DNA from: Vitrella brassicaformis CCMP3155
Lineage: Eukaryota > Protista > Chromerida
NCBI GenBank assembly: GCA_001179505.1
Contig: CDMY01000310.1
Coordinates: 62,001-126,000 of the forward strand
Reading direction: 5' to 3'
Length of the DNA stretch: 64,000 nt
A program made the translations under genes and the position numbers. A model generated the notes under the pieces. That model was not told the origin of the DNA. It searched no databases and saw only the letters and a list, made by a program, of their open reading frames with translations. Positions 4,848-8,267 of this stretch are shown here, piece by piece (the first letter of the stretch is position 1; every line of letters begins with the position of its first letter).

Positions 4848-6488
<1,641 letters not shown>

Positions 6489-6501
6489 GATCGTGTCGTC
6501 G

Positions 6502-6755
6502 CTGGCAGAACAGAGGGGTGGTGGTCTTGGGTTGGGTTGGTCTGCGTGGGCGAGGCAACAAGCTCCCTTGCTTGCGTTACCAAGCTAGAGGTTCGAACGG
6601 TGTAGATCTCAGCCGGCGCAGCTCCTGTGAGCACACCAGCACCCGCGCTTGTGCCGAAAAGCCAAAGATTCTCGAAGGTGGTTTTGTGGTAGTCGCGGTT
6701 AAGCTCGCGGATACCCTGATCGCTCAAACCCGGCACAATTCCTCTCTACGCTGAC
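6502..6755 (-). promoter_or_regulatory. Putative 5'-UTR intron of THI4 containing the riboswitch
   Basis: Pyrimidine tract plus CAG acceptor (ccctctgttctgccAG, AG at 6503-6502) 14 nt before the ATG. Candidate donors GTCAGC at 6755 and GTATCC at 6714. The donor choice is inferred. Confidence 0.6.
6554..6655 (-). ncRNA. TPP (thiamine pyrophosphate) riboswitch aptamer
   Basis: Minus strand reads GGCACAAGC-GCGG-GUG-CUGGUGUGCUC(ACAG)GAGCUGCGCCGG-CUGAGA-UCUACA-CCGU-UCGAA-CCU-CUA-GCUUG(GUAACG)CAAGC-A-AGG-GA-GCUUGUUGCC. P1-P5 all pair, and the conserved CUGAGA, GAACCU, GUAA loop and AGGGA elements are present. It lies 66 nt upstream of the THI4 ATG. Confidence 0.95.
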
Positions 6756-7049
6756 TGTGCGTGTTATCTGGTGCCAGGCATGCCTTTTCGGCGATTCCAT
6801 TGCAAGCAGTCGAGGCGATTCATCATTCATACGGGTTGGGAAGGATTAGGAAGGATGGGAAGGATGTCCATCCACTTCAGGCAATGCACCCCTTTTTCGT
6901 GATTCATCACTCGCTCATATACTGTACTACATATGATTGTCCGCCCGTACATATACATACGTGTATATGTCCACACACACACACAGAGAGAGATACAAGG
7001 ACAGGAAGCTGTGCTGTGCGTGTGACTCCTCTCTCTCTGACGCGCAAAG

Positions 7050-8267
7050 ATGGTGGCGATTCTCGTGGCTGTCTTGCTGTTGCTTGCACCAGCGAGCGGT
7101 GCCGAGATGAGGCTGCCGCGCAAGTCACGATTTGTTCAGCATGGCGCTGGTGGCGGCATGGGCACTGCGGTGAGCTCGAGTGACTCAGAGTCGCTGAAAG
7201 CCATGATGGACGACTCTTTAAAGCCATGTGAGCAACCAGACAGACAGACAGACAGACAGAGGCAGAACGATCACTGTCTCTCTTTGCATGTGCGTGTGTT
7301 GCAGTGAAGAGCGAGATTCGCAAGATAGAGAGCGCACTGAACATCAACGACGCAGGCACACAGTCAAGTCAGTGTCTCCCACGGAGAGAGAGAGACAGAC
7401 AGCCAGACAGACAGAGACACACATCCATCCATCCATCCATCCATGTGTGTGTGTGTGTGTGTGCAGGTCTTTTTCCACGATTCACGCAAGCCACCCATCA
7501 GCAGCACGACGCCACCACTCCCCCCTCACATCAGCAGGATGACCTGATGCGTGCCTTCAACGCCCTCGGTCTCAACACCGAGGCAGCTGACGCACTTGGC
7601 CAGATTGCGTCATTGCTGTTCGCCAATGACCCTTCGCACAACAACGACGGCAACACAATGACTCCGTCACGACTGGCATAGAAATGAGACACACACATAA
7701 CATACACAGAGAGCGGAGAGAGTGGTGCACTGCACGCGATGTGTGTGCGTGTGTGTGTGTTGTGCAGGTGCAATTGGTGCAGTCAGCTCTGAGTCAGAGA
7801 CCGAATTCCGACGCAGACAAGACGCACATCAACAAGTAAATGAGGCAGTCAGCAGCAGGCCAGCCAATCAAATCCCTGACTCTTGTCTCGTGTATATCTT
7901 TCTGTCGCTCAGCGTGTTGGCGAATTGGCGACAGTCGATGCAGCAGCAGCAGTTGCCGCAGACACAGCAGTTGATGGCATCACCGCCAGTCTTCAACAAC
8001 AATGCACCGAATGCACCGTTCATGGTGAGTGAGGGAAAGCCACAAAGCAAACGACAAAACACACACATGAATGGAATGTGGTCTATGCACACCAGGCACC
8101 TCAGTTCATGCAGCAGCCACAGGTGATGCAGCAGCAATAGTAAGACACACAAAATGACAACACACCCACACCTGAATACGTGTGTGTCTGTGTGCAGTTG
8201 GCCACCGATGGCACCGATGCCATCTTGGCCAGTCGTCGCATTTGCACAAGGCCAGCCTCAGCCCTGA
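7050..8267 (+). CDS. Secreted hypothetical protein (signal peptide, Q/P-rich C-terminus), multi-exon
   Basis: MVAILVAVLLLLAPASGAE signal peptide. Introns 7228-7304 and 7368-7466 keep frame, and downstream exons are conserved in frame in the duplicate at 644-1587. One internal junction (about 7660-7768) is not resolved. Confidence 0.6.

What the first reader, a model, noticed from the sequence alone, without database searches (positions are those of the whole stretch)
6554..6655. Complete TPP riboswitch upstream of THI4 in a chromerid-like alveolate
Seen: the minus strand folds into every TPP aptamer helix. P1 GGCA.CAAGC/GCUUG.UUGCC, P2 GCGG/CCGU, P3 CUGGUGU-GCUC/GAGC-GCGCCGG, J3/2 CUGAGA, J2/4 GAA, P4 CCU/AGG, P5 GCUUG/CAAGC with a GUAACG loop. 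It sits 66 nt upstream of a clear THI4 start codon and 51 nt upstream of a strong 3' splice site. Established: eukaryotic TPP riboswitches control splicing of thiamine genes (THI4/NMT1 in filamentous fungi, THI4/THIC in Chlamydomonas, THIC in plants). Inference: this is a functional splicing-regulating riboswitch. I am not aware of one described for chromerids or the apicomplexan stem lineage, but I cannot check the literature. It would show riboswitch control of de novo thiamine synthesis in the photosynthetic relatives of Apicomplexa.
Basis: partly seen in the sequence, partly recalled or inferred. Interest (0 to 1): 0.93.

Follow-up and report, generated by a model that had tools for sequence, protein, structure and literature searches.

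The report
Divergent TPP riboswitch before Vitrella THI4

Summary
Minus strand 6554-6655 folds into all TPP-aptamer helices and is the only TPP-like match in the window. It scores 38.9 bits against Rfam RF00059 (window E 4.5e-4), below the curated cut-off of 54.3.

The gene 66 nt downstream is an 8-exon THI4, 100% identical to the Vitrella brassicaformis CCMP3155 protein, so "chromerid" is correct.

The strongest support is new. Chromera velia THI4 mRNA has a canonical TPP aptamer (72.1 bits) at the same place in its 5' UTR. Between the two species all 21 model-aligned pairs stay paired, and 8 show changes on both sides.

Two qualifications apply:
- Vitrella lacks the equivalents of G60 and G78, two conserved residues of the pyrophosphate arm, so "complete" is overstated and the ligand is uncertain.
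- Transcript assemblies from three RNA datasets run collinear with the genome from about 6688 to the AUG. The aptamer therefore sits in the mature 5' UTR, which has no AUG, and splicing control is unsupported.

Alveolate TPP riboswitches were already reported (SSSP genes of Perkinsus and Karenia), but none for THI4 or for chromerids.

The scan had already noted this same stretch in an overlapping window.

The parts
6554..6655 (-). TPP-class aptamer, P1 to P5 (102 nt)
   Evidence: RF00059 38.9 bits over the full model. The MFE fold reproduces the three-way junction. All 21 model-aligned pairs are also paired in the Chromera ortholog, 8 of them with changes on both sides.
6607..6612 (-). J3/2 CUGAGA, the pyrimidine-sensing core
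   Evidence: Identical to the family consensus and to Chromera. PMC3764141 lists U39-A43 as highly conserved and important for recognising the pyrimidine moiety of TPP.
6612..6640 (-). P3, extended to 12 bp with one bulge and loop ACAG; no P3a
   Evidence: cmscan leaves the model's P3a stem out for both Vitrella and Chromera and places inserts of different length (14 and 12 nt) in the P3 loop.
6566..6591 (-). P4-P5 arm (pyrophosphate-sensor helix), derived. C6588 plus inserted U6587 stand at the G60 position, A6569 at the G78 position, one nucleotide is lost, and C6570 (the C77 equivalent) is kept.
   Evidence: cmscan alignment compared with the canonical Chromera arm CCUGAUCAAG..CUUGCGCAGG. 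The MFE fold makes it a nearly continuous hairpin, CUCU/AGGG + A.A + GCUUG/CAAGC.
6489..6688 (-). Mature 5' UTR of THI4 (about 200 nt), unspliced and without AUG
   Evidence: The RNA contigs of X1 and X2 run 6288 to 6684 and 6681 without a joint, and there is no RNA depth at 6723-7307. L018, L019 and L020 are collinear with the genome, the longest from 6688. No ATG lies in 6722-6489.
6489..6553 (-). G-poor spacer (31 C, 10 G of 65 nt) between the aptamer and the AUG.
   Evidence: Composition. The CAG is not used as an acceptor in any assembled transcript.
6486..6488 (-). THI4 start codon
   Evidence: It is the first ATG of the transcript, and the resulting model equals P0202.
6290..6488 (-). 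THI4 exon 1 (coding part)
   Evidence: Joint 6198/6288 in the RNA contigs; model checked.
6151..6200 (-). THI4 exon 2
5870..6073 (-). THI4 exon 3 (dinucleotide-binding motif)
   Evidence: Pfam Thi4 E 5e-31; joints.
5695..5763 (-). THI4 exon 4
5425..5628 (-). THI4 exon 5
   Evidence: Pfam Thi4 E 5e-20; joints.
5201..5324 (-). THI4 exon 6 (begins SCMDPN, which I read as the catalytic-Cys motif)
   Evidence: Pfam Thi4; translation. That this motif holds the sulphur-donor Cys is from my own knowledge.
5009..5130 (-). THI4 exon 7
4848..4925 (-). THI4 exon 8, including the TAA stop at 4850-4848

Best explanation
This is a genuine descendant of the TPP riboswitch aptamer. It is orthologous to a canonical TPP aptamer at the same position in the Chromera velia THI4 mRNA. 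It is transcribed about 33 nt from the mRNA 5' end and stays in the mature 5' UTR of Vitrella THI4, about 65 nt before the first and only AUG.

The most likely role is feedback control of this costly thiazole synthase by a thiamine-derived ligand. (That this type of THI4 turns over only once is established, cited in PMC9544697.) The likely site of action is the intact leader. A ligand-locked aptamer of -44 kcal/mol near the cap would hinder 43S loading or scanning, or the ligand would shift the balance between the aptamer fold and an alternative pairing of the GGGUG strand with the C-rich spacer.

Shown here: the fold, the homology, the covariation, transcription, the absence of leader splicing in the available RNA data, and the absence of uAUGs.

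Inferred: ligand binding, the direction of regulation, and the translational mechanism.

The pyrophosphate arm is derived in Vitrella (G60 and G78 equivalents lost). Affinity or selectivity for TPP over thiamine or TMP may therefore differ from canonical members.

The confidence of 0.5 is for the whole statement including the mechanism. For the identity part alone, that it is a TPP-class aptamer homolog, I would give about 0.9.
For: - RF00059 is the only thiamine-related match in the window and covers the full model: 38.9 bits, E 4.5e-4.
- It lies directly upstream of THI4.
- Chromera velia THI4 mRNA has RF00059 at 72.1 bits, E 2.6e-13, ending about 60 nt before its AUG.
- In the register of the Rfam model, 21 of 21 pairs are standard in both species, with 8 double changes, 1 single change and 0 broken. 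GGGUGCUG, CUGAGAU, ACCU and AGGGA are unchanged.
- THI4 of Vitrella, Chromera and one environmental sequence form a clade with full local support.
- The aptamer is in the mRNA. Contigs from X1, X2, L018, L019 and L020 are collinear from 6688/6684/6681 to the CDS, while all 7 CDS introns are removed.
- Five Chromera contigs from different runs have identical unspliced leaders.
- Both leaders lack AUG. Shuffle probabilities are 0.11 and 0.03, and 4-5% of genomic 200-nt windows lack ATG.
- For Chromera, the MFE of the whole leader is an alternative fold that pairs the 5' strands of P1 and P2 with the spacer. It is 5 kcal/mol better than the enforced aptamer fold, as expected for a two-state switch.
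- McRose 2014 reported 5' UTR riboswitches without apparent splice forms in algae and suggested an undocumented or translational mechanism.
Against: - The score is below Rfam's gathering threshold.
- G60 and G78 are replaced. Both are highly conserved, and G78 is described as the only base that directly contacts the pyrophosphate (PMC3764141). Engineered thiM variants mutated in the pyrophosphate helix lost their thiamine response (bioRxiv 10.1101/2025.01.21.634073).
- No ligand-binding or expression data exist.
- In diatoms, predicted TPP aptamers did not regulate (PMC9544697, abstract).
- Contig assemblies drop rare isoforms, so a minor spliced form cannot be excluded.
- In Vitrella the aptamer fold is already the MFE without ligand, so a thermodynamic switch is less obvious there.
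- Covariation rests on only two sequences. An environmental relative of the clade shows no aptamer in its short leader.
Confidence: 0.5

Rival explanations
1. One reading: the aptamer controls alternative splicing of a 5' UTR intron, as in Neurospora NMT1 or Chlamydomonas THI4. The acceptor would be the CAG at 6502. The donor would lie in or near the aptamer, for example GGGUGC at 6642, which resembles the local donors GUGCGU and GUGCGC, or GGUAAC in L5.

The unspliced form seen in databases would then be the ligand-bound state, if the cultures were grown in vitamin-containing medium. That culture condition is my assumption and was not checked.
For: - All experimentally characterised eukaryotic TPP riboswitches act through splicing (statements in PMC9544697 and PMC4260697).
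- A pyrimidine-rich run ending in CAG lies 11-13 nt before the AUG in both Vitrella and Chromera.
- Vitrella introns are 66-106 nt long with weak donors of the form GU[ACG]NG. An intron running from 6580 to 6503 (about 78 nt) would fit that range, and one from 6642 to 6503 (about 140 nt) would be somewhat longer.
Against: - No joint in the leader appears in any RNA contig from three independent Vitrella datasets, nor in five Chromera contigs.
- The donor at 6714 proposed in other first-stage notes lies upstream of the transcript 5' ends (6681-6688), and RNA depth is zero at 6723-7307.
- With no AUG in the leader, keeping or removing a leader intron cannot create or remove a decoy uORF, which is the known fungal and algal logic.
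Confidence: 0.22
2. The element is a relic. Vitrella inherited a functional THI4 riboswitch, still canonical in Chromera, but mutations in the pyrophosphate arm have inactivated ligand sensing. What remains is a stable but constitutive leader structure.
For: - The score is 38.9 bits against 72.1 for Chromera.
- The G60 and G78 equivalents and one junction nucleotide are lost, and the arm is predicted to close into a nearly continuous helix.
- These residues are described as needed for Mg-mediated pyrophosphate binding.
- Predicted diatom aptamers are unresponsive (abstract).
- An environmental member of the same THI4 clade has no aptamer at all.
Against: - Every helix pair is intact, and J3/2, GGGUGC and AGGGA are unchanged.
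- P1 and P3 are even longer than in Chromera.
- A useless -44 kcal/mol structure 33 nt from the cap of an expressed mRNA should be selected against.
- All the damage is concentrated in one junction rather than scattered, which looks more like remodelling than decay.
Confidence: 0.22
3. The match is chance: a GC-rich hairpin cluster that happens to resemble the TPP model.
For: The score is below the gathering threshold. The fold z-score is only -2.3. The window's other sub-threshold Rfam matches are low-complexity artefacts.
Against: - The match covers the full model with all conserved blocks and lies in the leader of a thiamine-synthesis gene.
- The ortholog in Chromera scores 72.1 bits at the same position and shows compensatory changes.
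Confidence: 0.02

Closest known systems
TPP riboswitch in the THI4 5' UTR of Chlamydomonas reinhardtii and Volvox carteri (Croft et al. 2007, as listed in Suppl. Table S2 of PMC4260697)
   Same: A TPP-class aptamer lies in the 5' UTR of THI4 of a photosynthetic protist. In the tree the chromerid THI4 groups with green-algal-type THI4.
   Different: From my own knowledge, the Chlamydomonas element works through alternative splicing that adds a uORF-bearing exon. Here the leader is unspliced and has no AUG, and the pyrophosphate arm is derived.
TPP aptamer in the Chromera velia THI4 5' UTR
   Same: It is the orthologous gene with the same position, ending about 60 nt before the AUG in an AUG-free mature leader. 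All helices correspond.
   Different: Chromera keeps the canonical CCUGAU...GCGCAGGGA pyrophosphate arm and scores 72.1 bits, above the gathering score. Its P3 is shorter and its leader can adopt an alternative MFE fold.
Alveolate SSSP 5' UTR riboswitches of Perkinsus marinus and Karenia brevis (McRose et al. 2014, PMC4260697)
   Same: They are alveolate and sit in the 5' UTR. [quoted passage not shown]
   Different: They are attached to a putative transporter rather than a biosynthetic enzyme. No chromerid was examined, because no genome of a photosynthetic alveolate was then available.
Fungal NMT1/THI4 TPP riboswitches (Cheah et al. 2007, cited in PMC9544697)
   Same: A TPP aptamer controls a thiazole or pyrimidine synthesis gene from the 5' region.
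   Different: From my own knowledge, those aptamers lie inside a 5' UTR intron and act by choice of 5' splice site with uORF decoys. None of those features is seen here.
Predicted diatom THIC/SSSP 3' UTR aptamers (Llavero-Pasquina et al. 2022, PMC9544697)
   Same: These are bioinformatically predicted TPP aptamers in an alga with a plastid of red-algal origin.
   Different: They are in the 3' UTR. They were tested and found not to respond to thiamine, which is a caution against assuming function here.

Membership tests
TPP riboswitch aptamer (Rfam RF00059, THI element) | Covariance-model score at or above the curated gathering score (54.3 bits) | tested here: not met
   Vitrella scores 38.9 bits. 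The Chromera ortholog scores 72.1 bits.
TPP riboswitch aptamer (Rfam RF00059, THI element) | Three-way junction with P1, the P2-P3 arm and the P4-P5 arm | tested here: met
   Full-model alignment. The MFE folds of the aptamer alone and in leader context reproduce it.
TPP riboswitch aptamer (Rfam RF00059, THI element) | J3/2 UGAGA T-loop that recognises the aminopyrimidine ring (U39-A43) | tested here: met
   CUGAGA at 6612-6607. Its role is described in PMC3764141.
TPP riboswitch aptamer (Rfam RF00059, THI element) | Pyrophosphate-sensor residues G60, C77 and G78 in J4/5 and J5/4 | tested here: not met
   C6588 (+U6587) stands at G60 and A6569 at G78; only C77 (C6570) is kept. The conservation and role of these residues are described.
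TPP riboswitch aptamer (Rfam RF00059, THI element) | Helices maintained by compensatory change in relatives | tested here: met
   Against Chromera, 21 of 21 pairs are standard and 8 have changes on both sides. Only two sequences are compared.
TPP riboswitch aptamer (Rfam RF00059, THI element) | Association with a thiamine synthesis or transport gene | tested here: met
   It is in the 5' UTR of THI4.
TPP riboswitch aptamer (Rfam RF00059, THI element) | Specific binding of TPP | not testable with these tools
   This needs in-line probing, ITC or SHAPE.
Eukaryotic splicing-type TPP riboswitch (Neurospora NMT1, Chlamydomonas THI4, plant THIC) | The aptamer lies in or next to an alternatively spliced intron | tested here: not met
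   The leader is collinear with the genome in every assembled transcript, while the 7 CDS introns are removed. Rare isoforms cannot be excluded.
Eukaryotic splicing-type TPP riboswitch (Neurospora NMT1, Chlamydomonas THI4, plant THIC) | A decoy uORF or altered 3' end in the ligand-bound isoform | tested here: not met
   There is no ATG in 6722-6489 and none in the Chromera leader.

The most novel reading that the evidence does not exclude
Vitrella carries a natural TPP-class aptamer whose pyrophosphate pocket has been remodelled: the G60 and G78 equivalents are lost and the arm closes to a helix with a single A.A mismatch. It would then sense a different thiamine-related ligand, or stop discriminating by phosphorylation state. 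It would also regulate a eukaryotic mRNA from an unspliced 5' UTR, that is, through translation or scanning rather than splicing. The canonical Chromera ortholog would serve as a built-in evolutionary control.
Probability: 0.2. Interest if true: 0.8.

Novelty: new variant of a known kind. Interest (0 to 1): 0.55.

Why it matters
It places a riboswitch on a de novo thiamine-synthesis gene in both sequenced chromerids, the photosynthetic sister lineage of Apicomplexa. The library I could search holds no report of that.

The Chromera and Vitrella pair offers something rare: two orthologous eukaryotic aptamers, one canonical and one with a rewired pyrophosphate arm. Both sit in mature, unspliced, AUG-free 5' UTRs.

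That makes two open questions directly testable:
- How do eukaryotic riboswitches that are not tied to splicing work? McRose et al. raised this in 2014.
- How much of the pyrophosphate pocket can a natural TPP aptamer lose and still function?

The Vitrella element also shows that Rfam's gathering threshold misses real homologs in protists.

Tried and rejected
- Default Rfam scan at gathering scores: no match. The match appears only with E-value thresholds.
- Exon 1 as a protein query: nothing found.
- Exon 5 as a query: only exon-sized ORFs at 74% identity or less. I fetched eight such loci, L001-L010 (two have an acylphosphatase gene beside THI4; their organisms were not identified), and none has a TPP match at E 0.01 or better. 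This was a dead end.
- The 50%-identity representative library: no close relative of the Vitrella protein.
- MAFFT alignments of single exons to a full-length scaffold were unstable. I used A2 despite two misplaced pieces, and it still retrieved the Vitrella and Chromera proteins.
- MAFFT put the two aptamers out of register. I therefore compared pairs in the register of the independent RF00059 alignments, by coordinates.
- Metagenome scan for the Vitrella-type arm: no match.
Only 30-34%-identical prokaryotic Thi4-like genes lay nearby.
- The environmental THI4 clade member P0209 and its cluster mates: leaders are 54 nt or shorter and carry no aptamer.
- The donor at 6714 suggested in other first-stage notes lies outside the transcript.
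- The shared spacer motif CCCAACCC: I judged it compatible with chance in two C-rich spacers and dropped it.

Full report
**1. What is in the sequence**

Read on the minus strand, 6655-6554 forms:
- P1, 9 bp with one bulged U
- P2, GCGG/CCGU
- P3, extended to 12 bp and capped by a tetraloop
- the invariant CUGAGA at 6612-6607
- P4, CCU/AGG
- P5, closed by GUAACG

An unconstrained fold of the 102 nt gives exactly this architecture (-44.5 kcal/mol, z -2.3). It survives when the whole 253-nt leader context is folded.

Infernal against all of Rfam 15 finds nothing at gathering thresholds. With E-value thresholds, RF00059 (TPP) matches 6547-6656(-) over the complete model at 38.9 bits. E is 4.2e-6 in a 601-nt search and 4.5e-4 for the whole window on both strands. 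The curated cut-off is 54.3 bits. The other sub-threshold hits in the window are microRNA models on GT-rich low-complexity DNA.

**2. The gene and the organism**

Downstream lies an 8-exon gene: 6488-6290, 6200-6151, 6073-5870, 5763-5695, 5628-5425, 5324-5201, 5130-5009 and 4925-4848. Exons 3, 5, 6 and 7, the four conserved exons I tested, match Pfam Thi4.

The 349-aa product carries SCMDPN, which I read as the sulphur-donor cysteine motif of single-turnover THI4 enzymes (own knowledge). It is 100% identical to a protein named for Vitrella brassicaformis CCMP3155. The genomic record is CDMY01000310.1 of GCA_001179505.1.

**3. Is the aptamer transcribed, and is it spliced?**

Contigs of two RNA runs (X1, 1409 nt; X2, 1422 nt) remove all seven CDS introns exactly as modelled. 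They then run without any joint from 6288 to 6684 and 6681. RNA depth is zero from 6723 to 7307, while a DNA run covers that stretch evenly.

Three further transcript assemblies that encode the identical protein (L018, L019, L020) are base-for-base collinear with the genome from 6688, 6681 and 6633 to the ATG. L018 and L019 may be assemblies of the same RNA samples as X1 and X2, so I count three independent RNA datasets in all.

From this I conclude:
- Transcription starts at about 6685-6690.
- The aptamer begins about 33 nt from the 5' end and stays in the mature mRNA.
- The CAG at 6502 is not used as an acceptor in any assembled form.
- The leader 6722-6489 has no ATG, so there is no uORF.
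- The donor-like GGUAUC at 6714, invoked in other first-stage notes, lies outside the transcript.

**4. Comparative evidence**

Close relatives were hard to reach; section 9 lists the searches that failed. A profile made of a metagenomic THI4 plus the Vitrella exons retrieved the Chromera velia CCMP2878 protein, which is 74% identical to the Vitrella protein. In a tree of 124 THI4 sequences, Vitrella, Chromera and one environmental sequence form a fully supported clade.

Twenty Chromera RNA contigs encode this protein, and I inspected five. They carry RF00059 at 72.1 bits, E 2.6e-13, at L011:61-167, with the AUG at 218. That is the same position relative to the start codon as in Vitrella. Their leaders are identical and free of AUG.

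I compared the two species in the register of their independent alignments to the Rfam model:
- All 21 pairs of P1-P5 are standard pairs in both.
- Twelve are identical, one differs on one side, eight differ on both sides and none is broken.
- GGGUGCUG, CUGAGAU, ACCU and AGGGA are unchanged.

Four of the eight double changes are in P1. A one-base shift of register there would reduce them to one, so the conservative count is five. This is the pattern expected of a structure kept by selection in both lineages, and it removes chance as an explanation.

**5. What is different in Vitrella**

All the score lost relative to Chromera comes from the pyrophosphate-sensor arm.

| | 5' strand | 3' strand |
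|---|---|---|
| Chromera | CCUG-AU-CAAG | CUUG-CG-CAGG (canonical) |
| Vitrella | CCU-CUAG-CUUG | CAAG-CA-AGG |

In Vitrella the G60 position is C6588 with an extra U6587, the G78 position is A6569, and one 3' junction nucleotide is missing. C77 (C6570) is kept. The MFE fold turns the arm into CUCU/AGGG, an A.A mismatch, then GCUUG/CAAGC, a nearly continuous helix.

PMC3764141 lists G60, C77 and G78 among the most conserved residues. All three contact a metal ion that coordinates the pyrophosphate, and G78 is given as the only base with direct contact. A 2025 preprint (10.1101/2025.01.21.634073) randomised A61, C63, C77 and G78 and recovered switches that no longer respond to thiamine.

The pyrimidine pocket is therefore intact, but pyrophosphate recognition is doubtful or works differently. 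Genome and transcripts agree on every base, so this is not an assembly error.

**6. How it probably works**

*Shown.* A conserved, transcribed TPP-class fold sits near the cap in an AUG-free leader of a thiamine-synthesis mRNA, in two species, with no leader splicing in the available data.

*Inferred.* The fold senses a thiamine-derived ligand and reduces THI4 output. The arrangement fits control on the intact leader best. Either a ligand-locked structure hinders 43S loading or scanning, or the ligand shifts an equilibrium with an alternative fold.

For Chromera, the MFE of the full leader is such an alternative. GGAAG and GGGUGCU of P1 and P2 pair with CUUCC and AGUACCC in the spacer, at -59.7 kcal/mol against -54.7 for the enforced aptamer. 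In Vitrella the aptamer fold is already the MFE (-62.6), and the best alternative reaches -56.4.

McRose et al. noted that many algal riboswitches sit in 5' UTRs of genes without splice forms, and suggested an undocumented or translation-type mechanism.

*Rivals.*
- A splicing switch whose ligand-free isoform is absent from the cultures that were sequenced. Whether those cultures received thiamine is my assumption and was not checked. GGGUGC does resemble the local donors GUGCGU and GUGCGC, and both species have a pyrimidine run ending in CAG just before the AUG.
- A relic that no longer binds ligand. Diatom aptamers that fail to regulate are a precedent (PMC9544697, abstract).

**7. Literature**

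- McRose et al. 2014 (PMC4260697) reported alveolate TPP riboswitches only in the SSSP 5' UTRs of Perkinsus marinus and Karenia brevis. They stated that no genome of a photosynthetic alveolate was then available.
- The chromerid genome paper (PMC4501334) lists thiamine synthesis among chromerid pathways and does not mention riboswitches.
- A 2024 THI1/THI4 survey searched only plant sequences for riboswitches.
- Searches joining riboswitch with Vitrella, Chromera or chromerid returned nothing relevant.

Within the reach of this library, the THI4-linked chromerid riboswitch is undescribed. I could not inspect Rfam's own full hit list, which may already hold the high-scoring Chromera element.

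**8. Verdict**

The element is a real, conserved TPP-class aptamer on THI4 in a chromerid. It has a derived pyrophosphate arm and shows no evidence of splicing control.

I file it as a new variant of a known kind and score interest at 0.55. It is incremental as a taxonomic extension. The natural pair of a canonical and a rewired ortholog in unspliced leaders is what makes it useful.

**9. Dead ends**

- A protein search with exon 1 found nothing.
- Eight loci fetched from exon-sized ORF hits had no TPP element.
- Two metagenome pattern scans returned no relative.
- The environmental clade member has a leader of 54 nt or less and no aptamer.
- MAFFT could not align the two aptamers.

Noticed in passing
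window 6602 (run X2): One RNA contig matches the window upward from 6602, which is the aptamer's 5' half. On the other side it continues for 212 nt with unrelated sequence (the 30 nt nearest the window read ACTCCTGG...GCCGTAGA). That sequence is absent from the window. It is either an assembly or template-switch chimera at a short GTAGA repeat, or a second transcript that shares the P3/J3-2 sequence.
   Followed up: partly
window 5425-6381 (run X3): A sediment metatranscriptome holds correctly spliced THI4 exons that are about 96-100% identical to Vitrella (0 to 4 differences per piece). A Vitrella-like organism therefore lives, and expresses THI4, in that sediment. There is no coverage of the leader, so its aptamer is unknown.
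   Followed up: no
window 7472-8000, + strand: A neighbouring gene is transcribed divergently from about 7470, with a GT..AG intron at 7836-7912. The region 6690-7470 in between has no RNA coverage and is presumably a shared bidirectional promoter. The depth of THI4 relative to this neighbour differs about 25-fold between runs X1 and X2. Contig depth is a poor measure of expression.
   Followed up: no
L011:1262-2707 (Chromera velia THI4 transcript contigs): The Chromera THI4 mRNA contigs continue about 1.4 kb past the stop codon and contain a further 128-aa ORF (2146-2532). This could be a long 3' UTR, read-through into a neighbouring gene, or a bicistronic assembly.
   Followed up: no
L016, L141-L144 (environmental THI4, clade with Chromera and Vitrella): Metatranscriptome contigs from several samples encode a THI4 that groups with the chromerids. 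The true start is an upstream in-frame ATG (L016:55), not the one the gene caller chose. The 5' UTR is 54 nt or shorter, and no TPP aptamer is found anywhere in the 1.2-kb transcript.
   Followed up: partly
L080, L051, L048, L118, L070, L120 (metagenome contigs): These prokaryotic contigs match the GGGTGCTG...GGCTGAGAT...AGGGA aptamer pattern and carry Thi4-family genes on the same contig, 30-34% identical to the Vitrella protein. In L080 the pattern lies about 730 nt upstream on the same strand; for L051 and L048 the coordinates do not show adjacency or a shared strand. I read them as TPP riboswitches near prokaryotic Thi4-like genes, which are known from bacteria and archaea.
   Followed up: no
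window 5131-5200, 5325-5424, 6074-6150 and others: Vitrella THI4 introns are short (66-106 nt). They have weak donors (GU followed by A, C or G, then N, then G) and (GT)n or TG-rich tracts before the CAG/TAG acceptor instead of a polypyrimidine tract. The same repeats produce spurious microRNA-family matches elsewhere in the window.
   Followed up: no
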